Part shown: positions 1 through 26,775 of the stretch, one piece after another
Layout: each line of letters opens with the position of its first letter
Position numbering within the stretch: the stretch's first letter is position 1
Source: Ascidiella aspersa
Lineage: Eukaryota
Reading direction: 5' to 3'
Assembly: GCA_963924565.1 (NCBI GenBank)
Contig: OZ004607.1
Span: forward strand, 14,012,001-14,076,000
DNA: 64,000 nucleotides
Made by a program: the position numbers and the translations under genes
The notes under the pieces: generated by a model
Databases searched by the model: none
Told to the model about the DNA's origin: nothing
What the model saw: the letters and a program-made list of their open reading frames with translations, nothing else

Positions 1-913
1 ACGTTTGGTCATTTATTATCAAATTATCTCAAACTTAAAGGCATCGTACGTTATTAACAACTTTTGAATGGAGCAATAATAAAATCTAATTTTTTCGCAT
101 ACTCCATTAAAAAAACTTTGGGCAGTTTCCTTAGGATAGCTCATCTATTCATCCAAATGGTCGATGTGAAAAAACTCGTAGGCTACCTGATCTATTTATA
201 TATCTCATGGGCATGGCGGGATCAGCCGAAAAATAAACAATTTAATTACAGCTCGCTCGCCGCATTTCCTTTATAATTTCCGCTAAAACAACAGGTTCTC
301 CTGGGAATGAAGAGGACAGCAATCATCTTCAACCAATTTTCACACGCGCGTCATTATGACGCCATACTAACAAGCCTATAGCTGCGCCCAATTAAAATTT
401 AAAGGAAACATACGTTGGGTCGTTGAGTTACACTTACGGGGAATAATGAACTGTGGAGAAAGGAGGCCGAAACGGTCCGGAACAGCATCCGGTAAAATTC
501 TTGCCGGTACGCTTTTTCGGCAAAAAATATGTAATTTTTTCACGAGGCCAAATCCTTAAGCTATATTTTTTGTTTTAAGCACGTTTTTAAAATTAATTTT
601 ACCTTCACCCCTGAGTATTATATATAAGGATGATATAAGGATGCACCTGACTTAAACCGTTCTTTACCGCCACAGAAAACCGTCATATCACAAATATACA
701 ACGCTGAAACGCAAGGGTGTTTCCCAAGATAAATGACAGATTTAACCACTGGTAATGATGATTCACCTAGCAACGTAGGATTTAAACGACTTTGTTATAT
801 CAGTAGTACCGATTCGTTACTAGCTGAAATTTTCTAAAACTGAGTTAGTAAGTTGCCCTTATTTATTCTATTTAAAATTTAATTTTAGACGCCGATTAAA
901 TTATACAACCTTG

Positions 914-7000: not shown

Positions 7001-10000
7001 TACTTCGGGGCACAAGGTCATGCTCCCCATTTATATATTTTTGTCGATTTTAAGTACGTGATCAAACAAAAATTTCTCGTGCTTCAAGAGCTGTACATTA
7101 TCGCATAACTTCGCTTGAGAACCACTAGTGTATTTAACACGATGACAAAAAGGAAAAGCAGACACAAGCACCCGCATGTTGTGTTTTCGCATCTCTTTGT
7201 GTACTTCTTAATGTCACAACAATTTATGCGCCTATGTTGCAACTCTAACACAACTGTTTTTCGTAAAAATAGCCTTGTTAAATATTTAAATATAACTCTT
7301 AGATAACTATTGCTCGATGGTTATTTAATTGTTTTTTGTCTTACCGTGATAAAGTTTACACGTTCCTCAGGTGGATAACATTTAACTTTATGGTGCAAAA
7401 AAGATCTGGGCCACAAATGCCTGTTAGCAGAAGCCTGGCAGACTATGCCCACCTGGATGAGACGTTCAACGAATTGAAATGTCCATTGGGCAGCCTTAAA
7501 ACTGGTTGTTATAAAATAAGTAGCTCTATATCGCCACCTTTTGGTCACCGGATGTTTGTAGGCGAGTGCTGATAGGGAGGCTATGGCCTGGCTGGAGAGT
7601 GTAAATTATAATTCAAGGCCGACCCTGCATACACAGTGAAGTGCATCATGCCATAGTATGCATAATATCTGTTCGCTGAATAGATATGCTTCAGAGACTC
7701 AGCCATAGCTAAACGAGGGCGAAGTTTGTGCAAAGTGCGATTTTTTTTTTGCTTTTACATAATTAAAATAAACATAATTTAAAACAGCCAAAAGTATAGT
7801 TTAAGCCTTAGATAGAACAGCATGGCCTAGTACATCCTCGTTATGCCCATGCGAATGTCATAACTGTCTATATAACAAGAATGGTGACTATCAGGATTGC
7901 TTTTTTAACTCTAAAGAACTACTTGCCAAATCAAAGTATAACTGCAAATACACAACCGTTCTATCGAAATTTAGTACTTTTTAAACTAATAAACAACCTA
8001 TATGCTGAACACTGGCTTTTCCCTGCTAAACAATGTGCTTTGTATTTTTTTTAGAATGGTACAAAAAAATTATTTCCTGCCAATTTTAGTGCATAACGAT
8101 CCTACATATTCAACATTTAAAAAAAATATTGGATTGCATACATGTGTAGAACAAGCACATGTTTGCTTGGGAAATAGATTTTTCAAAAAAAATTTTTTTT
8201 TATATTTTTGGGTCAATTTCTTTGGTTTTCTGTCTGATTCTTCGGCCGAAATAGTCGCCAGCTTTCTGCCATACTGGTGTAAATAGTTGAAATACAACGT
8301 AAAAATAATTAATAACAAAACTCTAGTATATTATTGGAATAGGAAATGGGATAAATAACTGCATCAAAAGCGAAAAAATACAGGAAATATTTTGCAATAC
8401 ATTGCTCAAAATCAGAGATACACAACTGTATAAAGCCAAAGCGAAGTTCGAGGTGAACTTAATGCGATAAACCAGGCCTGCATGGTTAATTCTGCTGGCT
8501 CGTGTTCATCATATATTACTTTGAAGATTTAATAGACTTAAATGTCATTAAATTTAATTAAAAACTAATTTTTTCATAGACATTTTCAAAAAGCTGAATA
8601 TATATATTCAGTAGAAAGAGAGTGGCCCAAATAATAGATAAAAGATTCATTCTTTTATTAGCAAACGTTTCGGCAATTTATTTTGCCATCATCAGTGCAG
8701 TAAGTGACTTACTGCACTGAATATATATATATTTTCGATTTATATGTAATTTTAATCGATTTGAAATAATTTTGACAAATTTTGACTTAACATGCAAATT
8801 TTGACAAAATTATTAAGTCAAAAAATAATCGCCCTAGTTATAATATGTGCAGTGGAGAATAGCTCGTTTAATTTTGATGTTTAAAACAGATTTTTTTTTA
8901 GACAACAAAATACTGAAATCCTAACACTGGGTGTATCACTCCAACAAACTGTTCTAAAGGTGCAAAAAAAATGATTATTACACACAGAAAATATTTTTAA
9001 GGGGCAAATGATAAATATGACAAATCTTACCCCATTTCGTCCTTGGTGACAAGTTTTATGGCTTCCAAAGACTGGAGAGCCTTTCTTGCAATGGAAGAGG
9101 AGCCACGGCAGAAATGTGATGGTTTTGTTCCTCTGCTCTTTCGGCCTGAATGTACAAGAAACAAACAACAGTTATAATTCATTAAAAATAAAAACTACCA
9201 GATGAATATTTCATATATATAACAGTTTAGCAGGACTTAATTATCTATAGAATTCGCTATTCTTATACAAGATTGCAAAATAATACATAGACAGGTAAGC
9301 ATTTATAGCAAACACTTATTTTATTGATTATTGACTTTCTGAAATTGGCAGTCCTAGGCTACAGAGCTAATAGTGACAAACATTATACAAGATCCAACAT
9401 ACCGCCATAAATTTTTTGGAAAGATTTTACTCCAACACCACCTCTCATGTACAAGTGACGGATGATGGAAGCGCATCTAATGTAGAACCAGTCCTGATTG
9501 TAAGGGGACAACTCCTTGAATTTTGCAGTCTTCACCAAATCAACCCATTCTGGGACTCTTAGTTTTCCAGACCTTAACAAATTAACAACTACTTCTAAAA
9601 TACCAGTGTAAAAATGCTGTTTCCTTTACACAATTTGAAATGCAATAGTATTGATGTAAGTTGAAAAAGTCATTAGGTTCAAGTGCATCAGTCTTGGTAA
9701 CAAGTTTTAGATAACAATTGTAAAACAAGTATAAAAAAAGCATTTTCATACAAAAAAACAATTGTAGGATAACTTGTTAGGATTTTATTGCCCAACATGG
9801 CATTATTTATACCAGGGTGGTCCAAACCGAGGCCCGCGTCCCCATGTGGCCCCGCAACATCATTGTTCATGGCCCGCGAAGCACTGTTGAATTATTGTAA
9901 TGCGTGTAGTTGAGGGTTTAATCAAAGAAATATAAGTGACCAATGACCAGCAAGCATACTGCAACTGTTTGGTTATGATTACATTTTTCCGGTTACATTA

Positions 10001-13227: not shown

Positions 13228-14731
13228 AGGCCTAACATATATGTCCTCTTTACGGAGGATTTGTCCTCTTTTCTGAAGGAAAGAGAATGGTCGAGGGATG
13301 GACGCACCGCCGAGGACGCACACAAATGCACAAATGTCCTCTTTTCTGCATTTCGAGTTAGCAAGACTTTTAACAAGACTTTTAGGCGAGACGTTGCATT
13401 TATTTCCCAAAAAATACTGCAGCCATGATTCCCATGAGACATGCTGAGTTGCTGGTTTAAAAAAGATTTTTCCAACAAATTGCCCTACCAGCCCTATCTT
13501 CTTGATTGTTATTGCAAACATAGTTACAAATATTGCGCCAGAAAAAACTGTTAAAAATCGCGTAATTTTACTTGAGCGTTATGGCCTATAATGCAAATAT
13601 TGAACGTATTTTTTTTTGATGCAGCTAAAATGGTGCAAAGAAAGAGACAGTCTATTAGTTTTATCAGTTTCGAGCATCTTAACGGTTGATAGGCCCCTAT
13701 ATAATTTCAATGATGTTTCGTGTATAAACAATTTCACGATCTCGCTGAAGATCATCATTCCTTTTTAGCAATAGAAAAGGGAACCGCAAAGTATTCATGA
13801 ATCTGAAAAATAAATTTAATTTGTTTTTTTTGTGTCTGTTTTTGTGAATTTTGCTTTTCTTTGTTTTTGTAACTTTTGACTGTAACCAGGGCCGGATTAA
13901 CCATTAGGCTAATAAGGCTATATCTTTGAGCCCTGTAAAAATTCGGCCCTCAGTTAGTTTTATTATTATTCAATAGTCGGAATTCAATACAGTTGCTGCG
14001 TGTCTGGCGTCTATTGTCACGATTAATAAGCAATTTCTGCGAACTAGGTTTGGCGACGTGGCACACTGCTGCATTAAGATTGAATTATCGTATTTGTGTA
14101 TTAGTTGCCAGGTTAGTTAGAGCAGTGGTTCTCAACCTTTTTGTCTTACGGTCAGGTAAAATTTCAAAACAAGTTTTCGGACCGGGTAGACCTTCAAAAA
14201 TCAAAATTCACCCAAAATGTAATTAAGACAAAAGTATGCAACTTCAAAGCAAATAATTAAAACTTCAATTTAATGAGCGATTTGCTGCTGTCTTTTTGAT
14301 ATCATACGTGTTATACGTGGTTCTATTAAGTTTTTCACATAAAACTGGTGTTAAAGTTTAAGACTGAAACGAGTTTTAGCCGATAAACTAATAAAGTCAA
14401 GCGTTTTGCAATTGAGATATAAAATGGTAATATATTTGACGGACCGGCAGGAAAGTTGACGGGGACCGGACGTTGAAAACCACTAAGTTAAAGTGTTTTT
14501 TTAAAACAGGTCTAGGGCTTTAGGCTTATGGAAGTTAAGGTAATTACGCCCTTCTCTAGTAAATTAGGCCCTTCCCAAGTAAACAGCCTTGGGCCTATAT
14601 ACCCTTAATGCTACCTGTAACTACCAAGGAAATGTTAAACATCATCAAACTCAAACGTAACAATTCTACTTTTGTTTTACTTGTCGGCAAAAAATGACCT
14701 CTTTTTGGATGCTGAAAATATGGTAGCCCTA
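13228..14731. mobile_element. Composite MITE cluster: outer element with AGAGGACA-type subterminal motifs and nested insertions
   Basis: Left end ...CATATATGTCCTCTTT with repeated TGTCCTCTTTT; right end TGACCTCTTTTT...AAAATATGGTAGCCCTA. Contains a CAGGGCCGGATT element from about 13887 and the hAT MITE at 14123-14485. Confidence 0.5.
14123..14485. mobile_element. hAT MITE
   Basis: CAGTGGTTCTCAAC ... GTTGAAAACCACTA with TSD AGTTAGAG/AGTTAAAG. Confidence 0.8.
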
Positions 14732-17445
14732 TAGTGTAAATGACTGTGTAACTTAAATTGTAACCGAAAGCACATGGCATCATCCGGCGGACAAACTTTT
14801 TCATTTATATAGGTAGGCCTAGAAAGATTTTTTTTATACAATTTATTATTCGTAAAACGAGAAAAGCGCAAAAAACTAAATTATAAATCCAAATCTATTA
14901 TGTAGTCAAGAAGCACTTAGTTTTGTATGTCGGCATAATTGCTCTTTTTAAAGCCGAATATCGTTCATAAGTTTGATCAGAACATAATATCGCGAAAAGG
15001 TGTAATGTAGCCGAGGTATTTTTCGCCTACAGCTTCCTCAGAGAGACACAATCCACAAACGCTGACGTTTTCCCAGTAATTCACGTTACGGACCCAAACA
15101 AAATAAGTGGGGTTTATGTTGCGGTTCGAAAATATATTGGTTTGACCAGTGGTTCTCAACCTTTTATGCTTCGTGGCCCCTTTGAAAGGCTCTCAACCCT
15201 CGCAGCCCCCCTGCTTATAAAAAAATATTTAGCTTTGTTTCTACGTGTATTTTTTCTTGTTTTACTTCTCCACGTTAATATCAAATACAGATATTAATCA
15301 ACGAATAAATGCACTTAGTTTCTCCAAAATTTAACAAATCAGTTATATTAATTTAAGTTAACTTATTTAGTCATTACAAAGCTTGATCTTGAAGTTTTTT
15401 TTTTCTCTGTTTTGTACTCAGACAAGCCAATGTTACTACATTCGTCGAGATGATTTGTGGATTTTCGGTTTAAGAATTACTATTAATTTACATAACCAAC
15501 CTAGCTGACTATTGTTCTAAAATGACCTTGAGTTACCCTCCAGCGTACTTTATGCGTTTTCCTACGGAATGTTTATTTTGCAACTTAACGCCCCTTAAGG
15601 GAATTGCGAAATCTCTGCACCTGGCATTATACGTTAGTTTCTCGCCCAACGGCATTTGACGGACTCTTAATGATTTATCGGCAAGGAAACGGCCCGGCCG
15701 CCTGAAAAATGCTGATGATATTGGATACATATAAAGCACCACATGTACGTAGGGTAACTCGTAATTTTCCTCGATAAACGAAAGAAAAGGATCCACGCTT
15801 CTACTTTTAACATTTCTCGTCTAAAAACGTTTTAGAAAACTGTGTTATAAAACATTACAAAAAAAGTTTTACCGTCATAATATAAACCAAAAAATAAAGT
15901 TAACTGGCAATTTTTGAAAGTGGTGTCTGGTTTTGCAATACGTAGCTAGAGAGTTGTGTCCGTGGTCAGTGGCTTAGCCAGCCGAAATATGTGTGGGGCG
16001 AAAACTTTGAACTTAAACTATAGTAAGAGTATTTGATTTGAAACACCACCCCTTGATGCAGAAAATGACAAGACACGCTGAGTAGGCAAACTATACTTAA
16101 TAATTTGACACTAAAACTGTTACCTCACAGCGATTAATAGACCTTATATAAAACATAAACAAATAACTATTTATAACGAATCATTAATGACTATAGGGCC
16201 ATTTTTATTTTAACCTAGAAAAAGATTTTTGACTTTATTTTATCAAATTTTGACTATATTTTAACCTAACGAAATTGCTTGTTTGTAGAGGTCACAGATC
16301 TTCCTTGAATTGATTCCAGTTAGCCAAACGTAATATTTTGTGGAAAAGTCAAGGTGTTTTATGGATTATAAAAAGTGCGTCGTTTTTTTGGCGACAGATT
16401 TAGCTAGCTGAGGCAGTTTTGCATTACAGAATGTCAGTAGGCTATTCCTAAAATCCAAACTGTTGATCCCACCAGGCGACCTTCACTTTGCATGAGATAA
16501 CCGTCATGCTTTACTTCTATGCGATTTACGATGTTTCGTTTTCAATATGCACATTGCGCTGAATTTCGGTAAACACAACCATGTGCTTAAATCGGAAACA
16601 AGTACCGTAGTTTACTCACAAAATTGAACAGTCAGGTTTTAATTGCATCGAAATCAAAAAGTAAATAATTATTTGCTAAAATCTTTGTAACCTACAGTAG
16701 CAGCTACTTAAGCTAAAAACATCTATGTATTGTTCGGTATAGAAGAAAAAAAAAACCTTATCGTTGCTATCCACTCATTCACGCTTATTGTGTGACGTCA
16801 TTGTAAAGAAAATACAAAAATCGTACCAAAACAGCAGAAACATGTTGAGTTATGGCGACCCCATTTGGGGTCGCGACCACTGGTCGATGACATATATATT
16901 ATTTTTATGGAATGTATACCTTTGTTCAGTTACGGTAGTTTCAACACCAAAAAATTTAAAAAAACAAACATTGAAGTGATATTGCAAGATTGAACCAAAG
17001 CTGACTATCAGTTTGCGGGCCTAAAAAGCTGAACTCGGCCTGCAGTTGGACCACGCTGAATTGACTCATAATTAATCAGACCAAAGCGGTTATTGTAATT
17101 TTGAATAGAGCCGTACATATAAAAAAAACTGTTGAAAATACAATACCCGCTATGGACTGAATTGGTAGACAACAATGTTAACACAGTTAAAGACGCTAAA
17201 CATTTCCTTCGTTTTTAGGGATAAGCTGTCGTATTTTTAAAATCATTGTAAGGTTGCGCATTGCGCTGTCTTAAAGTACGTCCGTTTCGCTGTTGCAGGC
17301 CATGAACAGTTTAAAAGAGTTTAGGATAGTCTCTTTTAATTTAGATTTGTTGTTATAGTCCGTCAATAAAGATTGTATAATTTTATAACCGAAAAATTAT
17401 GTTAGGGCAATTATTGTAGCATTTTTCACCTATCAGGACTTGTAG

Positions 17446-18345
17446 GTTAACAGCGTTTGTATAAATGGCAAACTTAAAAAAAGTCATATATTTTTCTATC
17501 TAAAAGTAATATTTCTGTCCGTTGCAATATTTGCTGTAACATGGAAATTAAACAAATATAACGATTTGGTCGATTCAAACCGACATAGGCCTACATTAGT
17601 GGAACCTACCAGTCAAAAGCTTTCGTCAATCCACTTTATCACTTACGGCAATGCAAAATTTGCCGAATCCAGACGTAGAATCGCAAAGGAGGCAAACCAG
17701 ACAGGCTGGTTCGCCAGCGTTCGTGCGTTTCAACCTGACGATTTGCCGACGACTTTTCAAGAAAGGTACCACGACATACTGCAACAACCTCGCGGCGGCG
17801 GATACTGGGTCTGGAAGTTTTTCTTCATTGAAAAGGCACTGGAAGAAATAGACACCGGTGACTTTTTGCTTTATCTGGACGCTGGGTGCAAAGTGAATGC
17901 TCAAGCCGAACCAAGGTTTCGAGAGTATGTCGCGATGCTGTCCGAGTCCCCATTCGACATACTCGCCTTTAAGCTGGAGGATTTTAGAGAGGAATACAAA
18001 TGGACGACTGAACGAGTATTTCAGGCGCTCGGAGTCGAAGCCGCTAATTCCAGCATCCGTGAGAGCGCACAACGCATCACCGGCATCATCCTGATCCGCA
18101 AAGGTGAGCATTCGCAGCGCTTGCTGACTATGGTAAGGGATGTACAGGAAAGCGATCCTTGGTTGTTCTCTGACAAATACAACGACGAGACTCGTCGACT
18201 AAACTCCGAGTTCGTCGATGCTCGGCACGATCAGAGCGTTTTCAGCGTTTCGACCAAAATTGTCGGCAGCGTTGTGCTCAGGGATGAAACGTTTCCACCA
18301 GGCCAAGAAAAGTATCCGTTCTGGGCATCGCGAATACGACAGTAA
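17446..18345 (+). CDS. Intronless putative glycosyltransferase (GT-A / DUF1647-like) with N-terminal type II membrane anchor; start codon unresolved
   Basis: Stop-free frame from 17446 to the TAA at 18343-18345. Motifs RGGGYWVWK, GDFLLYLDAGC (DxD-like position) and RHDQSVFS. The in-frame upstream segment reads KLKKSH-IFFYLKVIFLSVAIFAVTW (basic residues followed by a hydrophobic TM). The catalytic part is about 50% GC in sampled lines. AATAAA at about 18761 and 18794. Confidence 0.8.
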   Translation, partial: VNSVCINGKLKKSHIFFYLKVIFLSVAIFAVTWKLNKYNDLVDSNRHRPTLVEPTSQKLSSIHFITYGNAKFAESRRRIAKEANQTGWFASVRAFQPDDLPTTFQERYHDILQQPRGGGYWVWKFFFIEKALEEIDTGDFLLYLDAGCKVNAQAEPRFREYVAMLSESPFDILAFKLEDFREEYKWTTERVFQALGVEAANSSIRESAQRITGIILIRKGEHSQRLLTMVRDVQESDPWLFSDKYNDETRRLNSEFVDARHDQSVFSVSTKIVGSVVLRDETFPPGQEKYPFWASRIRQ

Positions 18346-18899
18346 GCATCCCGGCTTGCCAACCCATAGTAAACCCCAATAATTCCATTAGGTGGTTAAT
18401 TTTTATTTGTTTGCCATTTCAACCCTCGGCAGGTTCTCATGTAAAATATGTCAAAAAAAGAAAATGCAACTTTTTTAACGTTAAACTAAAAACTGTGAAT
18501 ATTTATTAGTAGTGTAGGACAAAATATTCGGGTCGACTAATTTAAATATGGTGTTTACAAGTATTAATATTTATGTTTATTGCATGTTCTTGGTACCGTA
18601 AATACTTCAAAAATGTGTCTGGTTTTGCTATTTTCGTATTTATAACAGGTTTTGTGATTTCCTGTATTTATTGTATGCTTTTTAGCGTACCGGGAAGTAA
18701 TAAGTATGTGGTGTCTGTGCATGTATTTTTTTTTATAATACCAGCGTAGACCAACGACATAATAAAGCCAAATAAGCTGTAACATAGTGACGTAATAAAA
18801 TTTAACCAAGTCCTAAACTCATCGGAAAAATACCTACATGGCCTATGGCCCTAAATAACATCTACATTTATGAGGAAATGGTATGGGTTCGTAATTTAC

Positions 18900-19150
18900 A
18901 GCCTTCGTTTGGGCATCGGCGGTTTTGGTATGCACCCCCAGTTTGAACGGCGTCGTTGTTTTGGCAGCGGACTGTTTGCCTTTTTGAGATTACGGAGGGG
19001 TTAATGTTGAGGTTAGGGTTGGAATTATTGGGGGAGTTAGTAGTAATGTTTAGCGAGAAGAAGTTGTTTAAATCTGGCGGTGTATGTATTATTCTGGCAG
19101 CTTTGGTTCTTATAACGATATAAATCTTATTAAAAGTCCTATTAGGCTAC
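18900..19150 (-). repeat. Decayed copy of the dispersed element at 32960-33275 and 60215-60510
   Basis: Reverse-complement similarity, including CGTTTGGGC, GTTTGAACGGC and GGTTAGGGTTGGAATTATTGGGGGAGTTAG. Confidence 0.55.
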
Positions 19151-20432
19151 GACGTTGATGGATGGGGGGATTCTTCTGGTTTTTTGGAGGAGCATAGCGT
19201 ATGATTTCAGGGATGACGTCACACAGTTAACGTTAAAACGTGACATGTTTCATTAAAAAAGAAAAATGCTTTACCCTTGTATAGTTTGAGTGGCCTAAAC
19301 ATTCATTTTCGATTAGGCGCACGGGACTAAAGACTAATTTTGATTCGAAAAAGGTTTGTATTTACCTAGTTAAAATAGGGGAAGAATGTCACTTGGAAGG
19401 GCGTGATCACGTTTCCCTCTCGAGTAAGCGCAAACATATTCAACAATAAAAGTGACTCTTTAAGTAGGAATAATCTGCCCGTATAGATTTGCCAATCTCT
19501 AGATAACTTTTTAAATAAAATTATCCGGAGTTATAATTGTACAAGGGGCTTGAAAGCACGTTATATAATTATTTAAAAACAAATTTTATGGAAATACAGA
19601 TATGCAAGATAAAATTTAACCAGATCGAGTCGCTGTTGGAAAGGAAATAAAAATATGAATATATATATATATTATGTTCAGTCTAAAAATTAATTTTAAA
19701 GTGATTCAAAAATACGTTGTGGGTACGCTGTATGGAAAAAATAAGCTGTCAGTTAATTCAATGAACTAAAAAATCATACACTAGACTAGAGCAGTGGTTC
19801 TCTGGAGTAGAGCGCACGAGCTACCGATAAAATGTTGGTGGGGCATAGTTTTGTAGTCACAGACCAAACATATATTCTTATGATAGTGGGGCCGGACTTA
19901 TTTGAAGAACAAAAGCCGGGCGTGCTTTACAAAAGTTTGGTAATCACTGCTCTATGAAGATTTTAGGCTAGGATGACTTTCGACTGGTGAAAATTGTGTG
20001 CAAACCTGTTAAAAGTGTATAAAAAGGTTAAATGTTCATCTTTTATGACCCATTAGCATTGGCCGGCGCGAAACTGACAAATGGAATCTGTGCTTTACTG
20101 AAAACATTTCGATTTTCTCCAGACCAAAATAAGGAAACACCACGAAGGCCAGTGTGACACTTGAACTTTGTTATAATATTAATAAATATATCTCAATATA
20201 ACGCAATCAAAAAAATAAAACGTGCCGCGGTGAAACAAATGTCACGTGCAAGAACATAAGAAGGCTGCGTACAGAGTAACACAGCGGGTGGGGAGTTTTT
20301 TAGGTTGGGCATTCTAGAAAACATATTAAACAGGATGAACTACAACTATAGGCAAATTGTGTATAGTTAATTTCAAGGTTGAAATTTCGGGTGGAGTTCA
20401 AGCTCCGGCGTAGCAAAACAAGACATCAAGTT

Positions 20433-23400
20433 TTATAGAAGCATCCTGGTCGGGTCCTCCATGTATTTCTTAAAGAACTGCAGCCACTTGGCACCGACCG
20501 CACCATCCACTACACGGTGATCGCAACTCAACGTAGCTGAGATCACGTTTGCCTCGCGAAATCTTAAGCAAAACGAAAAACAAAGAAATCAGATTATTTG
20601 CCCATTGTTTGATTTTCAATTTTTTTACAATTAAATGTTTTTTCAGTGGCAATACTAGTAAATATAAATTTTCACCAGTTAAATTCTTAATGTTTTTTCA
20701 TAATTAAGATTTGTGTACTGTAAGTTACGACTTGAAATAGACATTTTTCTGGACTTAAAAGACGACTTTTCGCAACAATGGCTTGAAGCGTCCGCGTCAA
20801 ATATTGGTTATCACTTACCCCCGTTCGTTGCTTTCGTCCGGCACAAGTTCCCCCCTCGCCGAACCAACGGCCAGAATGCAGGCTTGGGGCGGGTTGATAA
20901 TTGCGCTGAACTGCTTAATACCGAACATGCCGAGGTTGCTGATGGTAAAAGTTCCACCCTGGCGAAAAAAATTTTGTATGTGATATTTTAATTTCACAAA
21001 TAATCTATTTTTAACTAGTCGTTGTTTGTACGACTTAAAATTTTGCTTTGAATCCTTAGTGTTGATGTACCATAAATTCTTGTGGCTGAAGCTTTCCTTC
21101 CCTTGCTTTTGTGGCCAGGGATACTACATCTTTGGCAATGGCCTCCAGGCCCTTGTTGTGTGCATCAAACACTATCGGCGTGATGAGACCGTCATCAGTG
21201 CTTACGGCTACACTCATATCTACAGTGGTGTGTCTGAATAAAATGGTACAAAAGTAATTCACATGCACGTTATAGAAACATTGACAGTCGTGTCAGTTGC
21301 AGTTGTTATACGGACAACTTTAATAAATGACAATACACGGCTCTCTGCTGTTGAAGCGTAGGGTCAGCGATTCTTACACGCACGCAGTAGTAAGCAACGT
21401 TAAGCCAAACACAGGTTAGTTGATTTCAAATTGCCGACGGTCAAAATTGGGATACACCCTAAAGCGTAAATCCAGCAGCATTATAAGACTTTAGCAGCAG
21501 TATTGATTTGATTAAAACAACACTAAGCATTTAAACACGTGTTTAGCAACCTCAATGTTGTTTGTTATACTGATTTAGCCGCGTTTAGAGTTACAGAAGT
21601 AAGCGACGATGCTGGAACGGTTCGTAAGGTGGAGAAACAGGTTACAAATTTTAGGTAATTTCCTAATATAGACGGTAAATAAATGATTTAAAGTAACTTA
21701 AGATATTACTTTTATTGGTTTCGAAATTTGTCGTTGATACTGACATACCGCCTTATAAAAGTGTTCCTCCAAGAAGAATTTGCTTCGGGAACCTTAAGGC
21801 AGGACAGGGCGGCCGCTTTGATGATAAAATCGTTCACAGATATCTTAGATCCTAAAAAAAAAAATATTACCTTACACAAGCATATTCACTTTATAAACTA
21901 TGACATCAATCGAAGTAGTTACCATCTTTTTGTAATTCAGAGTTGAACTGCTTCCTCATAGCAAGAATTTTGTCCATCTCGACATCAACAACCAAATAAT
22001 AGTGGGGAATGTTCTGCTTTGACTCCAACAGTCGTTTGGCAGTAACCTTGTATTAATAATTATCATCATTAAACAATTGCTTTGCTTTGGTATTAAATAA
22101 GATATTTGTAAAGACATCCGTAACTAACACAAGCTAGCGATGTTAATGCCTAAAAAAATAAAATAAACAGTATGTTGACTGTTAATAAATGTCCCATTGT
22201 ACCGATTTCCCCACCTTACAAAGCTAATTCTATTAAAACTGATGGGTTTCACCAACCTTTCTTATGTTTGTCAAGGGAATGTCAGAATATTTCCCATCAA
22301 CTATTTGTGGTTGTTGTGTAGGCATTACAGGGGACGTTGCTGAAGGTGCAGGGGTTACAGCACTTGGTTTTGCAATTGAAGAAGCCTTACTGAGGTCTAT
22401 AGCACGAATACGCCCACCAGGCCCTGATCCTTGTCCTTCACATAAATGTAACAATGATACTATTAACTGAACAACACACATATTTTGGCATTAATCATCA
22501 TTCTATATAAGCATCATAGTACACAAAATCAAACAATCCGTTCAATATATATATTAAGTCTTTTCCAAAGTCAAAGTATGCATAATACAGTTAAAACATT
22601 GTTGGATGAAATTCAACATAAAATTTTGACAAAAAACAAACTTAAAAACAATTTTATGAAGTTTATTACAGGTTTTATTAAATGGTCACTTATATTTCTT
22701 TTTAATAATTTATACAAGTTAATAAGGTTCAGTAAAATTTATTATCTTGCCCACAATCTTCAAACATTACAGTTATTTGAAATGTGATTTGCCTGCAATA
22801 TTGTGGGCTGTACAACTATATATCTGTTCTTTATGAATAAAGTGTGTTGATCCCTGAAATAGAAGCAATATGACCCTGAAATATAACCACCATGTGTGTG
22901 TAAAGTTGCGGGTCTATGGTTCTTGAATTAAACCAATTGTTCCGTAACTGGGGTCAGCAGAGTACTGGGGGTCTATGGCGAAATTACAGTCTGTTTTATA
23001 TATAGTTTTAAATATATTCATTTGAGCGCTTCGTTTAATCTTTCATGTTGTGGTCAAGGGAGTCGACCATGTCAAAAGTTCTTTGCTCATAAAAGTCTAA
23101 GTATTCGCTGCACCTGCCAGTTGTGAAAGAGCTATTCCTTGTTCTCCGGCCATCTTTTTAGCCAACGGACTTGCAAAAACCCGGTCCCCAGATTGCATAG
23201 TTGGGGTTGAGGCAGGAGTGGGGATAGGAGGCTGTACAAGAGTTGATGCTGAAGATTGAGGCTGTGCTTCTGAACCAGCAGCTCCTGAAGGTGATGGGGA
23301 ACTGCCTGTTATGATATTTATGGTTTACAGTAATCAGTTATACTAATTATCTATGTGACATTGAATATTTTACATAGCATTCAAGTTTAAATTTGATTAG

Positions 23401-26400
23401 TTCGCTACTATGTATAAACAATACATTGGTAATTACAGCTACATTGGAAAGTTGACTACTCATAACATAGTGGATCAAGTATACCTAAATCTGTGTAGTC
23501 CGCAAATGCTGCAATATCAGACTCATTTTCAACAATAATACACAATGGTGTTCCTAATGGCAAATCCTTAGCTCCAACTTGAAGAAGAATTTTAGCAAGA
23601 TAACCTAAATGTAGAATTGTAAATTATTATTATTACAAAAATATGCCATACCATATGAATGTTTTACTTGGTTAAAAACTCGAATTATTTAGGTATTTAA
23701 CTTGAAATAATGAATGACAATCTATCAGATCCAAAATGAACTGGCTGACCTTAAATCTGTAAGGTAATTACTATAAGATAAAATGAACCAAACATAATAA
23801 TATGTCGTTTGACACTATGATACCTTCATCTTGGTATTCCAGGGCCATGGAAGCTTTGTCGGTTTCGATTGTGGCAATTGCATCACCTTCTTCAATCTTG
23901 TCACCTTCATTTATTTCCCATCTTAAAAAATACCAAGATATATAATCTTTAAAACAAGGCTCCGAGGCATTACACACTTTGTTTAAACAATATTATTACA
24001 TACTACTACCTACACATCACTGATAAAATAATACTAACAGTTTTTAATAAGCACATTTGGTTGAGGCTTAACCTCGGTGGTTGACTAATTAAGCTTTTTC
24101 AAGTTTTGAGATTGACCAATATTCATCCGATATTTATCATAGGTTTTGTTTAAAATAAAGTACATCTAAACCTGCTGTTTTCATTGCTGATAAAATGTAT
24201 TAAACACAGTAATATGGCCACAGGCCATTTGTCTATAGCCGTGGTACCTAACATTTTATAGTTTACGGCACATCCAAGGAATAATAATTATATTGCACCA
24301 AACTTACTACAAAAAAGTGATTAGTAAACAAAGAGTTACATTAAGCGGATAATCGATAGAGTAAATATGGGATTTTCAAAGATACACAAATATCTTGCCA
24401 CCCTTAAGGGTTAAGATGGCACCCTGGTTGGAAACCATTACTCCATAGAGCCATATATTGCGTTTATTTTACCAAACAGAAAAAACACAAAAAATTGTCA
24501 AAAAATAAAATTTATATTTAATAAAAGACCTGTGCTCTTTATAATCATGTATTTGTGGGATAAAACAAGTTCAAAAACTTACGCAACAATACTTCCAGTT
24601 GTCATAGTTGGTGACAATGCTGGAAGCACAACCTTCTCATGAGGGGGAAGGTTAGTAGGTGGAGTTGAAGTTGGGGAGACTGGTTCGTTGCTAATCTGAG
24701 TGGGAGGTGTTGAAGTAGGTGGAGCACCACCACTCTCAGCGTTCAGTTGATCTAAAGGAATTAATAACAGTCTGAAATACCTATTTGCTAGTTGCTACAT
24801 AATTAAACTTTTCATATTTTCTGTAGTAGAGATTTTTTACAAGCTAAAACTGGAAGGCAGCAGCTGGTCTGCAAACTCTAATAAGGCAACAAAAGTTTAC
24901 AGGTTTAGAAACGTTAACAAGAAAACTCTGCAGGTTTAGAAACATAAAACATAGTAAAATATGCAAAAAAGAAAAAAAAGATGTATTTGTGTACAGTAAT
25001 TTTATTGTGAATTACCATATTTTTGCGACCATTTTTCAAGTCGTTTCCAAAACTAAGTAAGAAATTCAGGGTTGAGAATTTGCATTCGCCACGCCAATGT
25101 TAAGTACAATTGGAATGCACAGTGACATACTGAAAAGTTATATGCATTTACTCGTCCAGTAAAAAAAGGTTATTTCCTCAGGTAGAGTTCTGATTGGTGC
25201 CTTACTGACAAGTGCAAAATTCAATTCAATAGTAACCCTGAAATTTGAAGTGCTTGGTTTTCCTCAGTGCTAAAGATGACTCAAGAAACTTTATGTTACT
25301 AATATACCATACCAGAAGGATTTATGTTCAACTTGTATGTTTCTTGAGTCAAAATTCACACCAGGTCTAGGGAATAACTCCGAATGACATGAAAACCAAA
25401 ATTTTGTTAAAGAGTCAAGTAAATGGTATAAAACAAGTTTCTAACATACAATGCTGTGTTCTACAATTATTGTGCAACTTATTGCATTAAAATTTTATGG
25501 ATATGTACAATTGTTTAAAATTTTAAATCATATATATATGTGACCTTCAACAAAATATCCTTATGGCTAAGCCTTAAGACAATATTATTGCATTTTACTT
25601 TCACATAATTTGTTTTAAATATTATTCCAGTATTCTGCATCACTGCATTTACAAAGCAAATTACTTTTCCCTTGAAGAATTTAAAGATTTCACTTGCACT
25701 TGCCGAAATGTAAATGTTATCGTGTCACATTGTACAAATTATATGTTTGTTTTTCTGGGCAACATCCTGTTATTTATATCTTGTTGTTTGTTTATGTTTA
25801 TAGTATATATTACTATTCTGGCAAAATGGTTTTAAACGAACACTGCCTTTTTTGAATTGCTTAATGTTTATCTTTACATGTTAAGGTTAACTTATTTTTC
25901 TTTTCGTTTCACAACAATAAGACAGTGTTGTTTGAATGGAAATAGATATTTTTCTTGCCCACAAAAAAAAAATTCCAAAGATATTTTTAATATATTTTGG
26001 GGAAGAATTTATAAGCTAACTTTAAGGTGTTTTGTTCTTGAATTCCCAAGTTTACCTCCAACACTTACTTTGTTTAAAATGTCAGGCAGAAGATATGTGG
26101 TTTAATTAACAAATATAATTCTACTAATGCTTTTCACTAATGCTGAGGACAACTGCTAAGCCTACTTATTATGTATTGTTAAAAACAAATAAAGTAATTA
26201 GTCTGCAAATACTTTTTATAAAACCTAAAAGAAAAAAAAAGATTTAAATTACCCGCTGTGACGTCTTTAAAAGCTGCAACATCATCTTCATTTTCTACAA
26301 CAATGGCAAGAAGAGTTCCAAGGGGAATGTCTTTGGTGCCCTCTGGAAGTAAGATCTTGGCAATAAAGCCATCATCAGCTGCTTCGAATCCCATGGTTGC

Positions 26401-26775
26401 TTTGTCGGTTTCAATTTCAGCCAGCAGATCCCCAGCAGTAAATTCATCTCCTTCTTTTATCTCCCACCTCACAATACTACCTTGTTCCATTGTGGGTGAA
26501 AGCGCTGGAAGCAAAAGTGTGCTGTGTGCAGGCAAAGAATAAAATCTTACACTTTGATGGAAAAAATATTTTCCTGTATTTCTGGACCATAAATTGGCAA
26601 GAAAGTCATTACAGTGTTTTTTTCTTTCATGTTGCACAAATTTGTGAATAGATTGGTCTGAATGCACAAGCAGAGATGTTAGAATTCTTGGACTCTTGGT
26701 GAAACATCGCCTGCTTCCTTTGATAAGTTTCAGGGATTGCAGGTTAATCCTCTGGAAGGTTTGACAACTTAACAT
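20433..26775 (-). CDS. DLAT: Dihydrolipoyllysine-residue acetyltransferase, pyruvate dehydrogenase E2, mitochondrial; 11 exons, 646 aa
   Basis: Exons 26253-26775, 24583-24751, 23824-23921, 23485-23604, 23114-23305, 22257-22435, 21923-22046, 21749-21851, 21071-21233, 20819-20958, 20433-20562 (1941 nt, phases consistent). Basic presequence, two lipoyl domains (PALSPTM...ETDKA twice), subunit-binding domain [10 protein letters not shown]...GSGPGGRI, catalytic [13 protein letters not shown] and [10 protein letters not shown]. Confidence 0.97.

What the first reader, a model, noticed from the sequence alone, without database searches (positions are those of the whole stretch)
17446..18345. Candidate horizontally acquired glycosyltransferase-like gene between RPS19 and DLAT
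Seen: a 900-nt intronless frame, whereas all neighbouring genes have many short exons. It is embedded in host-type MITE-bearing DNA, so it does not look like a contaminant contig. Known: the motif series HFITYG...RGxGYW(I/V)WK...GD(F/I)LLYxDAGC...RHDQS matches a poorly characterised GT-A-like family, distantly DUF1647-like, that I recognise mainly from bacteria, algae and large DNA viruses rather than from standard animal gene sets. Inference: a foreign sugar-transferase domesticated in an animal genome, possibly for extracellular glycan or tunic-type polysaccharide modification. GC content alone is not diagnostic, because SLC4A11 exons are similarly GC-rich.
Basis: partly seen in the sequence, partly recalled or inferred. 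Interest (0 to 1): 0.82.

Follow-up and report, generated by a model that had tools for sequence, protein, structure and literature searches.

The report
Alga-like glycosyltransferase gene family in tunicate
The open frame is real and sits in host chromosomal DNA, but it is one of about 25 copies of an unclassified sugar-transferase family whose nearest known relatives are in microalgae, giant viruses and marine bacteria, so it is a credible old foreign acquisition, not a lone recent insert.

Summary
Observation confirmed. Window 17446-18345 (+) is a 299-codon open frame, the longest in the window, carrying all four quoted motifs. It lies between multi-exon RPS19 and DLAT on a 41-Mb chromosome. 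An independent WGS run covers it at single-copy depth.

- **Not a singleton.** The genome holds at least 25 paralogous loci on five chromosomes, including a tandem array of about 11 copies. Some paralogues have a coding intron; some are pseudogenes.
- **Host.** A metazoan, and probably a tunicate: multi-exon Wnt genes and a CesA-GH6 arrangement.
- **Protein.** No Pfam, NCBIfam, PHROG or PDB sequence match. The AF2 model (pLDDT 92) is a GT-A fold, closest to retaining enzymes (PBCV-1 A64R, GT6; Z about 14.8).
- **Family size.** Huge: 4252 representative clusters, at least 479 giant-virus/phage loci and at least 534 bacterial loci. No named animal appears.
- **Phylogeny.** The host copies are monophyletic (100/97). 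They group at 100/99 with diatom/haptophyte-type sequences. Nesting inside that group is favoured but not significant (AU p 0.096).
- **The window copy.** It is the earliest-branching paralogue and is constrained (dN/dS about 0.1). It has no in-frame ATG: the likely start, at 17465, is one A short of frame at an A7 run. RNA support is about one read pair.

The scan had flagged this same stretch once before (s1-802352), and no other DNA.

The parts
17420..17436 (+). Acceptor-like pyrimidine tract ending in AG. It may be a cis- or SL trans-splice acceptor, which would give a 28-nt 5' UTR.
   Evidence: Read directly from the sequence. A matching pyrimidine-rich tract ending in AG lies about 40 nt upstream of the ATG of the chromosome-8 array paralogues. 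Inference only: no RNA junction was seen.
17465..17467 (+). Likely ancestral start codon, in the +1 frame relative to the open frame. As assembled it opens only a 12-codon frame.
   Evidence: Paralogues start with ATG, then a short tail, then the TM anchor, all in the same exon.
17476..17482 (+). A7 homopolymer run. One more A would join ATG 17465 to the open frame, giving MANLKKSH followed by the TM anchor.
   Evidence: Read depth of about 4 was too low to decide the run length. A contig of the sister organism B aligns only from 17476 onward (table 8, record 13).
17446..18345 (+). Open frame of 299 codons plus the TAA stop.
17488..17544 (+). Hydrophobic type II signal-anchor, residues 15-33.
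   Evidence: AF2 predicts a helix over residues 12-43. The stretch 17446-17630 has GC 0.32.
17629..18342 (+). GT-A catalytic domain, residues 62-299.
   Evidence: pLDDT is above 90 across the domain. VIA-align gives Z 14.8 to 2p73 and 14.7 to 4ayj over model residues 59-299.
17791..17817 (+). RGGGYWVWK motif. R116, G117, G119, Y120, W123 and K124 are at least 90% conserved.
17857..17889 (+). GDFLLYLDAGC: strand beta-4 followed by D145-A-G147, which sits at the DxD position of GT-A enzymes.
   Evidence: Strand at residues 140-144 in the model. Y143, D145 and G147 are conserved.
18223..18237 (+). RHDQS motif. H261, D262, Q263 and S264 are invariant in 59 family members.
9027..9586 (-). Host RPS19 exons (upstream neighbour).
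   Evidence: PF01090 matches at 90.8 and 38.2 bits.
20436..26775 (-). Host DLAT-type gene, multi-exon (downstream neighbour).
   Evidence: PF00198 exon matches. The first exon carries a lipoyl-domain ORF at 26179-26775.
18700..18899 (.). High-copy host repeat just 3' of the gene. More repeats lie at 14.1-14.9, 15.1-15.3 and 16.1-16.5 kb.
   Evidence: WGS depth of about 100-300 per read direction (100-600 with both directions summed), against about 3-7 over the ORF.

Best explanation
The frame is a genuine, chromosomally integrated member of a host-specific expansion (at least 25 loci) of an unclassified GT-A glycosyltransferase family. Outside this animal the family is found in microalgae (diatoms, haptophytes), giant viruses, cyanophages and many bacteria.

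The most likely history is this. An ancestor of this (probable tunicate) lineage acquired one copy horizontally from an alga-type donor, or from a virus of algae. The gene then duplicated. Some copies gained a coding intron, and some decayed. The window copy is the earliest-diverging surviving lineage.

The encoded protein would be a type II, Golgi-type membrane protein with a short tail, a signal anchor, a stem and a lumenal GT-A domain. It would transfer a sugar from a nucleotide-sugar donor. By fold neighbours the mechanism is probably retaining (A64R, GT6, GT8, GT34). D145 sits at the DxD position, and the invariant R-H-D-Q-S segment probably contributes to the donor/metal site.

What is shown: integration, family size, fold, phylogenetic grouping and purifying selection. 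What is inferred: direction of transfer, topology in the membrane, retaining chemistry, donor and acceptor. What is unresolved: whether this copy is still translated, because its ATG is one base out of frame at an A7 run.
For: **Integration.** Multi-exon RPS19 and DLAT flank the frame on a 41-Mb contig. An independent WGS run covers it at about 3-7x, which matches the single-copy expectation. A sister organism carries the ORF and its unique 3' flank at 98-99% identity.

**Family in the host.** 26 matches on C1, C2, C4, C5 and C8. A 7.73-kb tandem array holds intact ATG-started genes of 276-277 aa. Two-exon copies exist.

**Host.** Multi-exon Wnt loci, and a Cellulose_synt match 2.7 kb upstream of a GH6 match.

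**Fold.** pLDDT 92.3 and pTM 0.80. Z 14.8/14.7 to A64R and BoGT6a. Foldseek's top matches are mostly retaining GT-A enzymes (GT6, A64R, GT8/LARGE1/LgtC, GT34/XXT1); nucleotidyltransferases and a few inverting GT-A enzymes appear lower in the list.

**Glycan context of homologues.** In Pedobacter the homologue sits among four GT2 genes and a GT10 gene. Fusions to GT47 and GT10 domains occur.

**Distribution.** 4252 clusters, best identity 51%, and no named animal. At least 479 viral and at least 534 bacterial loci. Named nearest relatives are Chrysochromulina, Tryblionella and Thalassiosira.

**Tree.** Host clade 100/97. Host plus alga-type clade 100/99 on a stem of 0.37. The window copy branches first.

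**Selection.** dN/dS is 0.06-0.16 against the paralogues, and every conserved residue is present.

**Literature.** The family is absent from published tunicate HGT lists (PMC3494510, PMC13390645).
Against: - There is no in-frame ATG. As assembled, ATG 17465 opens a 12-codon frame.
- RNA support is about one read pair in roughly 6% of one run, and no splice or 5' end was seen.
- The AU test does not reject the alga-type sequences forming their own clade (p 0.096), so the host clade may be sister to them rather than nested within them.
- Most close relatives are unnamed metagenome or transcriptome proteins, including the sister pair P0004/P0007, which could be from other animals.
- The DxD position holds a single Asp (D-A-G). 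No sequence link to any characterised GT family exists, so the chemistry rests on fold alone.
- dS to the paralogues is saturated (at least 1.5), so the dN/dS ratios are approximate.
Confidence: 0.6

Rival explanations
1. The window copy is a recently disabled relic. The family is functional elsewhere (the chromosome-8 array), but a 1-nt deletion in the A run has put this locus's ATG out of frame, and it is no longer translated.
For: There is no in-frame ATG, and ATG 17465 is followed by a stop after 12 codons. RNA is almost absent. Other paralogues are visibly decaying: L002 has a stop in its cytoplasmic tail, and several loci have internal stops. No frameshift-stimulating structure lies downstream (z -0.15).
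Against: The frame has 299 open codons and every conserved catalytic residue. dN/dS is about 0.1 across a terminal branch of 0.36, so any inactivation must be very recent. An A7 run is a classic site of assembly or polymorphism error. Read depth was too low to decide.
Confidence: 0.3
2. Vertical inheritance. The gene belongs to an old eukaryotic family kept in a few lineages (stramenopiles, haptophytes, this animal lineage) and lost almost everywhere else.
For: Host and alga-type proteins form one strongly supported eukaryote-type clade on a long stem, all with N-terminal anchors. The AU test does not reject the host clade being sister to the alga-type clade (p 0.096). dS among host paralogues is saturated, so the family has been resident for a long time.
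Against: No named animal, fungal or plant homologue appears among 4252 clusters or in two word/profile searches that included host-paralogue words. The best tree nests the host clade inside the alga-type group, with a haptophyte outside (100/94), which conflicts with the species tree. The family is not in the Ciona HGT or gene lists that were read.
Confidence: 0.15
3. Direct capture from a giant virus (an endogenised NCLDV gene) rather than from an alga.
For: The family is very common in giant-virus MAGs (at least 479 loci, up to 42% identity). The best BFVD match has 35% identity. Viral rows surround the eukaryote-type clade.
Against: The host clade groups with alga-type proteins, not with any viral row (100/99). 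No viral hallmark genes are visible next to the window copy: the neighbours are RPS19, DLAT and host repeats.
Confidence: 0.1
4. A retrocopy of an intron-containing host parent gene.
For: Some paralogues (C1:8.49-8.50 Mb, C4:1.78 Mb) have a coding intron between anchor and catalytic domain.
Against: Those copies form a derived subclade (100/100), while the window copy branches first. Most paralogues have the single-exon layout. dS to every paralogue is at least 1.5. No poly(A) remnant was seen.
Confidence: 0.03
5. A contaminant or assembly artefact.
For: GC is higher than in the flanks. The nearest relatives are non-animal.
Against: The gene sits inside a 41-Mb chromosome between host genes and host repeats. 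It has single-copy depth in an independent WGS study. It is present in a sister organism. There are 25 loci on five chromosomes, some with spliceosomal introns.
Confidence: 0.01

Closest known systems
PBCV-1 A64R N-terminal glycosyltransferase domain (PDB 2p73/2p6w/2p72)
   Same: GT-A fold, with Z 14.8, rmsd 3.0 A and 182 aligned residues. It is a small single-domain enzyme from a giant virus of algae and is a retaining-type enzyme.
   Different: Only 11-12% identity and no sequence-level match, even with a family profile. A64R has a true DxD motif, whereas here the position reads D-A-G. The RHDQS and GYWxWK motifs define this family.
GT6 family (BoGT6a 4ayj; bovine alpha-1,3-GalT; human GTA/GTB)
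   Same: GT-A fold, Z 13.4-14.7 over about 200 residues. The animal members have a type II membrane layout. BoGT6a also lacks a canonical DxD and is metal-independent.
   Different: 10-13% identity and no Pfam match to the GT6 family. The catalytic Glu of GT6 could not be mapped, because no coordinates or residue-level alignment were available.
GT34 (PF05637, GMA12/MNN10, XXT1) and GT8 (LgtC, XXYLT1, LARGE1)
   Same: Foldseek matches at E 1e-6 to 1e-5. A GT34-bearing cluster is among the language-model neighbours. The order 'W-x-K, then about 20 residues, then a hydrophobic strand plus an acidic motif' recalls GT34 (from my own knowledge; not tested).
   Different: PF05637 gives no match to this protein or anywhere in the genome.
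DUF1647 (PF07801)
   Same: A fungal cluster in which 12% of members carry DUF1647 is a rank-10 language-model neighbour, with score 0.94 and 168 shared features, just under the tool's 170-feature guide for same-family hits.
   Different: No HMM match at E<=10 for this protein, none for 59 family members, and none in the whole genome.
Tunicate CesA (GT2-GH6) and other proposed tunicate HGT genes (Ni 2012, PMC3494510; Tamura 2026, PMC13390645)
   Same: A carbohydrate-active gene of non-animal affinity, fixed in a tunicate-type genome. CesA-GH6 is present in this genome at C5:19.61 Mb.
   Different: A different fold family, not in either published list. It has expanded to about 25 loci, and its apparent donor is alga-type rather than bacterial.

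Membership tests
GT-A fold nucleotide-diphospho-sugar transferases | Single alpha/beta/alpha Rossmann-like domain superposable on solved GT-A enzymes | tested here: met
   AF2 pLDDT 92.3. Z 14.8 (A64R), 14.7 (BoGT6a) and about 14 (GT6), over residues 59-299. 398 Foldseek hits at E<=1e-3, led by GT-A enzymes.
GT-A fold nucleotide-diphospho-sugar transferases | DxD (or variant) acidic motif at the end of beta-4 that binds metal and diphosphate | tested here: inconclusive
   D145-A146-G147 follows strand 140-144. D145 and G147 are at least 90% conserved. There is only one carboxylate, and metal dependence is unknown.
GT-A fold nucleotide-diphospho-sugar transferases | Nucleotide-sugar-dependent transfer activity | not testable with these tools
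   Needs an enzyme assay. Indirect support: homologues sit in GT2/GT10 clusters and are fused to GT47/GT10 domains.
GT34 (Pfam PF05637) | Match to the family HMM above the gathering score | tested here: not met
   No hit at E<=10. No hit in the genome. No hit in 59 members.
DUF1647 (Pfam PF07801) | Match to the family HMM above the gathering score | tested here: not met
   The only trace is a language-model neighbour.
GT6 | Sequence membership (Pfam Glyco_transf_6) and the catalytic Glu | tested here: not met
   No Pfam hit. 10-13% identity in structural alignments. The catalytic residue could not be mapped.
Type II Golgi membrane glycosyltransferase layout | Short N-terminal tail, one signal-anchor helix, a stem, then a C-terminal catalytic domain | tested here: inconclusive
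   A hydrophobic stretch at residues 15-33 and an AF2 helix at 12-43, followed by a low-confidence stem and the domain. Paralogues and algal relatives share this layout. In the window copy the ATG is out of frame.
Horizontally acquired gene in an animal | Physically integrated in host chromosome and not a contaminant | tested here: met
Horizontally acquired gene in an animal | Absent from other animals | tested here: inconclusive
   No named animal among the hits, and best identity is 51%.
Horizontally acquired gene in an animal | Nested within a donor clade with statistical support | tested here: inconclusive
   Grouping with alga-type proteins has 100/99 support, and a haptophyte lies outside at 100/94. 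The AU test for alga-type monophyly gives p 0.096.
Horizontally acquired gene in an animal | Expressed and under selection in the host | tested here: inconclusive
   dN/dS is 0.06-0.16. RNA amounts to about one read pair.

The most novel reading that the evidence does not exclude
A glycosyltransferase family of algal or giant-virus origin, still without a Pfam family, was captured by a tunicate ancestor and amplified to about 25 genes. These genes build a lineage-specific glycan, for example a tunic or mucus polysaccharide or glycoprotein. That would be a second case, after CesA, of foreign glycan-synthesis genes shaping tunicate biology.
Probability: 0.2. Interest if true: 0.8.

Novelty: new member of a known kind. 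Interest (0 to 1): 0.6.

Why it matters
Tunicates are the textbook case of an animal trait (the cellulose tunic) built with a transferred gene, and recent surveys list only a handful of further candidates. None of those is a glycosyltransferase of this type.

A foreign-looking GT-A family that has been kept under selection and has multiplied to about 25 loci would add a substantial candidate to that list.

It would also give an experimentally tractable eukaryotic entry point to a very large family that is entirely uncharacterised. That family spans more than 4000 clusters in giant viruses, cyanophages, bacteria and microalgae, and has no Pfam model and no solved relative.

Tried and rejected
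- **Family and sequence searches.** Pfam, NCBIfam, PHROGs and PDB sequence searches, by single sequence and by profile, found no family.
- **Genome-wide HMM searches.** DUF1647 and GT34 models found nothing in the whole genome.
- **Context of hits.** The genomic context and sample of the nearest unnamed relatives (P0001, P0004, P0007) could therefore not be seen. Three cluster look-ups added only the names Chrysochromulina, Tryblionella, Thalassiosira, Aplanochytrium, Alteromonas and Vampirovibrionia.
- **Programmed -1 frameshift or slippage.** In the ATG frame, the A run at 17476-82 is a slippery heptamer that would give the right protein. However, there is no downstream structure (z -0.15), and A7 is short for transcriptional slippage. 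No support.
- **Retrocopy reading.** Rejected.
- **GC as an alien signal.** Rejected, because host exons overlap the ORF's GC range.
- **Antisense ORF 17626-18111 (161 aa).** Treated as a shadow of the GC-richer coding strand and not pursued.
- **AU test for significant nesting within the alga-type group.** Not significant (p 0.096).
- **Reads.** The single read-laying run gave depth too low, and its tables were too truncated, to count A7 against A8 or to find a 5' junction.
Full report
**1. The observation**

Window 17446-18345 (+) is open for 299 codons, from just after TAG 17443-45 to TAA 18343-45. It is the longest stop-to-stop frame in the window; the next is 202 codons. At local composition, an open run of this length has a chance of about 6e-8.

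The four quoted motifs are present:
- HFITYG at 17632-49
- RGGGYWVWK at 17791-817
- GDFLLYLDAGC at 17857-89
- RHDQS at 18223-37

The neighbours are as described. Ribosomal_S19e exon matches lie at window 9027-9586 (-). 2-oxoacid_dh exon matches lie at 20436-22049 (-), with a lipoyl-bearing first exon at 26179-26775 (-).

GC is 0.50 in the catalytic part (GC3 0.56) and 0.32 in the first 185 nt. The flanks are about 0.36. Host exons range from 0.39 to 0.56 (GC3 0.35-0.66), so GC is not diagnostic.

**2. Two corrections to the observation**

First, the frame has no in-frame ATG before residue 164. The only plausible start, ATG 17465-67, is in the +1 frame and as assembled opens a 12-codon frame. 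It is followed by an A7 run at 17476-82. One additional A would give a short tail (MANLKKSH) followed by the hydrophobic anchor. That is exactly the layout of the intact paralogues: ATG, short tail, TM anchor and catalytic domain in one exon, with an acceptor-like pyrimidine tract ending in AG a few tens of nt upstream.

Second, the gene is not alone. A six-frame search of the 308.6-Mb assembly finds 26 matches at 53-69% identity on C1, C2, C4, C5 and C8. These include a tandem array of about 11 copies on C8 (6.90-6.99 Mb) with a 7.73-kb unit and intact ATG-started genes of 276-277 aa.

Several loci carry internal stops. L002 has a stop in its cytoplasmic tail. One subclade (C1:8.49-8.50 Mb, C4:1.78 Mb) encodes the anchor on a separate 46-50-codon exon about 260 nt upstream of an acceptor, so it has a spliceosomal coding intron.

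**3. Integration and host**

The window lies at 14.01-14.08 Mb of a 41-Mb contig. One read-laying run was allowed. It showed the following:
- An independent WGS run of the same species covers 17.3-18.5 kb at about 3-7x. About 6x is expected for single-copy DNA, given 1.9 Gb read over 308 Mb.
- The stretches 13.5-17.1 kb and 18.7-18.9 kb reach 100-600x, so they are host repeats.
- Contigs from a run labelled as a second organism match ORF pieces (17476-17624, 17972-18134) and the unique 3' flank (19308-19458) at 98-99%. A sister taxon therefore carries the same locus.
- One of those contigs aligns only from 17476, the first base of the A run, with 76 unaligned letters before it. I could not examine these.
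- The RNA run (about 6% of it read) gave depth of about 1 only at 18100-18499, roughly one pair. Its orientation fits a sense transcript in a standard stranded library. No junction or 5' end was seen.

The host is a metazoan: about ten multi-exon Wnt loci. It is probably a tunicate: a Cellulose_synt match at C5:19610700-19611167 lies 2.7 kb upstream of a GH6 match at C5:19613851-19614090 on the same strand. From established knowledge, that CesA-GH6 arrangement is the tunicate signature. Organism names were coded, so I name no species.

**4. What the protein is**

Sequence searches find no family:
- Pfam and NCBIfam, no hit for this protein.
- Pfam, no hit for any of 59 family members.
- PHROGs.
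- PDB sequences, by single sequence and by profile.
- PF07801 (DUF1647) and PF05637 (GT34), nothing anywhere in the genome.

With a 59-sequence alignment, AlphaFold2 gives pLDDT 92.3 and pTM 0.80. The model has a long N-terminal helix (residues 12-43), a low-confidence stem, and an alpha/beta/alpha domain at 62-299.

The domain is a GT-A fold:
- VIA-align gives Z 14.8 (rmsd 3.0, 182 residues) to the PBCV-1 A64R glycosyltransferase.
- It gives Z 14.7 to the metal-independent BoGT6a, and about 14 to alpha-1,3-GalT and GTA/GTB.
- Foldseek adds LARGE1, XXT1, XXYLT1 and LgtC.
- These leading neighbours are all retaining enzymes; nucleotidyltransferases and a few inverting GT-A enzymes appear lower in the Foldseek list. 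Identity is only 9-15%.

Conserved positions are consistent with an active enzyme. H261, D262, Q263 and S264 are invariant. R116, G117, G119, Y120, W123, K124, Y143, D145, G147, Q209, D243, R260 and R296 are at least 90% conserved. D145-A-G147 follows strand 140-144, which is the DxD position, but with only one carboxylate. The window copy has all of these residues.

Context in other organisms supports a glycan-synthesis role. In Pedobacter cryoconitis the homologue sits among four GT2 genes and a GT10 gene. Many marine homologues are fused to exostosin/GT47 or GT10 domains. In a giant-virus MAG the gene lies near a GT25 gene, among typical viral replication and repair genes.

**5. Distribution and phylogeny**

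The exhaustive search finds 4252 representative clusters at E<=1e-3, of which 2228 are at <=1e-10 and 240 at <=1e-30. The best identity is 51%. IMG/VR holds at least 479 relatives, mostly giant-virus MAGs, at up to 42% identity. GTDB genomes hold at least 534, including Rhodobacteraceae, Prochlorococcaceae, Pedobacter, Actinomarina, Akkermansia, Bacteroidales and Chlamydiae, at up to 38%.

The names recovered for the closest clusters are:
- the haptophyte Chrysochromulina parva
- the diatoms Tryblionella compressa and Thalassiosira minuscula
- further out, Aplanochytrium, Alteromonas and a Vampirovibrionia MAG

No animal name appeared. This held even in a profile search seeded with host-paralogue words.

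In a 148-row quick tree, the 14 host copies form one clade (SH-aLRT 99) inside a 28-row clade (96) with P0001-P0012, P0015 and P0016. A 69-row careful tree (LG+C20+F+G4) gives the following:
- Host clade: 100/97, with the window copy branching first (94/86).
- Host plus alga-type clade: 100/99, on a stem of 0.37.
- Inside that clade, P0009, P0008 and the haptophyte-cluster protein P0002 branch off before the rest (100/94).
- The host clade's sister is the unnamed pair P0004+P0007 (94/84).

However, forcing the 13 alga-type rows into one clade costs only 25.3 lnL units, and the AU test does not reject it (p 0.096). The affinity to alga-type sequences is therefore solid, but nesting, and hence direction of transfer, is only favoured.

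**6. Selection and age**

NG86 dN/dS between the window copy and its paralogues is 0.06-0.16, with dS at least 1.5 (saturated). Young array pairs give 0.23-0.46. The family has therefore been resident for a long time, and the window lineage has been under purifying selection for most of its terminal branch (0.36). Any inactivation at the A run must be recent.

**7. Literature**

I read three papers:
- Ni et al. 2012 (PMC3494510): its text lists no glycosyltransferase among the Ciona alga-related families.
- Tamura, Oda-Ishii and Satou 2026 (PMC13390645): it lists eight HGT groups in Ciona. These are GDH, TDH, alkyl sulfatase, UGM, endo-beta-1,3-glucanase, rhamnose mutarotase, a metal-dependent hydrolase and a TolB-like propeller. 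None of them is this family.
- The Styela clava genome paper (PMC7540406): it reports only cold-shock protein HGT.

I found no description of this family in animals.

**8. Verdict**

The frame is real, host-integrated and encodes a GT-A-fold, probably retaining, type II membrane glycosyltransferase of an unclassified family. Its affinities are with microalgae, giant viruses and bacteria.

The most likely history is one old horizontal acquisition followed by expansion to about 25 loci (about 0.6). An ancient vertical origin with massive loss remains possible (about 0.15). Whether this particular copy is still translated is open, and the pseudogene reading has about 0.3.

Noticed in passing
G000:C8:6903062-6988682 (loci L002-L012, L024, L185): A tandem array of about 11 paralogues with a 7.73-kb unit. 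Most are intact ATG-started genes of 276-277 aa, and at least two copies carry 2 TGA stops. The array copies read Y-S-D-A-G at the DxD position, where the window copy reads Y-L-D-A-G.
   Followed up: partly
L020, L021, L014, L015 (G000:C4:1.78 Mb; C1:8.49-8.50 Mb): A subclade of paralogues in which the tail and TM anchor sit on a separate 46-50-codon exon, about 260 nt upstream of an acceptor placed just before the catalytic domain. This looks like an intron gained after the family arrived.
   Followed up: partly
G000:C5:19610700-19614090 (L013): A Cellulose_synt match inside a 647-aa open frame lies 2.7 kb upstream of a GH6 match on the same strand. This is a CesA-GH6 arrangement and was used here only to place the host among tunicates.
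   Followed up: partly
G000:C54:13983-14669: An uninterrupted 547-aa open frame matches 2-oxoacid_dh at 267 bits on a small contig, unlike the exon-split host copies. It may be a bacterial (symbiont or contaminant) contig in the assembly.
   Followed up: no
window 14100-14900, 15100-15300, 16100-16500, 18700-18900: Very high-copy short repeats: WGS depth of roughly 200-600 (both read directions summed) against about 6 for unique DNA. They have sharp boundaries at 14404, 15146/15180, 16468 and 18748/18782, are also present in RNA reads, and are shared with the sister organism.
   Followed up: no
P0019, P0266, P0276, P0279, P0289 (PF03016); P0102, P0094 (PF00852): Many marine metagenome homologues are two-domain proteins that fuse this domain to an exostosin/GT47 or a GT10 fucosyltransferase domain. 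A 1099-aa Vampirovibrionia protein has two copies of the domain.
   Followed up: no
window 17476 (read-laying table 8, record 13): The sister organism's 225-nt contig aligns from exactly the first base of the A7 run, with 76 preceding letters unlike the window. The 5' end of the gene may differ between the two taxa.
   Followed up: no
window 17626-18111 (-): A 161-aa ATG-started antisense ORF lies inside the coding region. It is most likely a shadow frame of the GC-richer gene.
   Followed up: no
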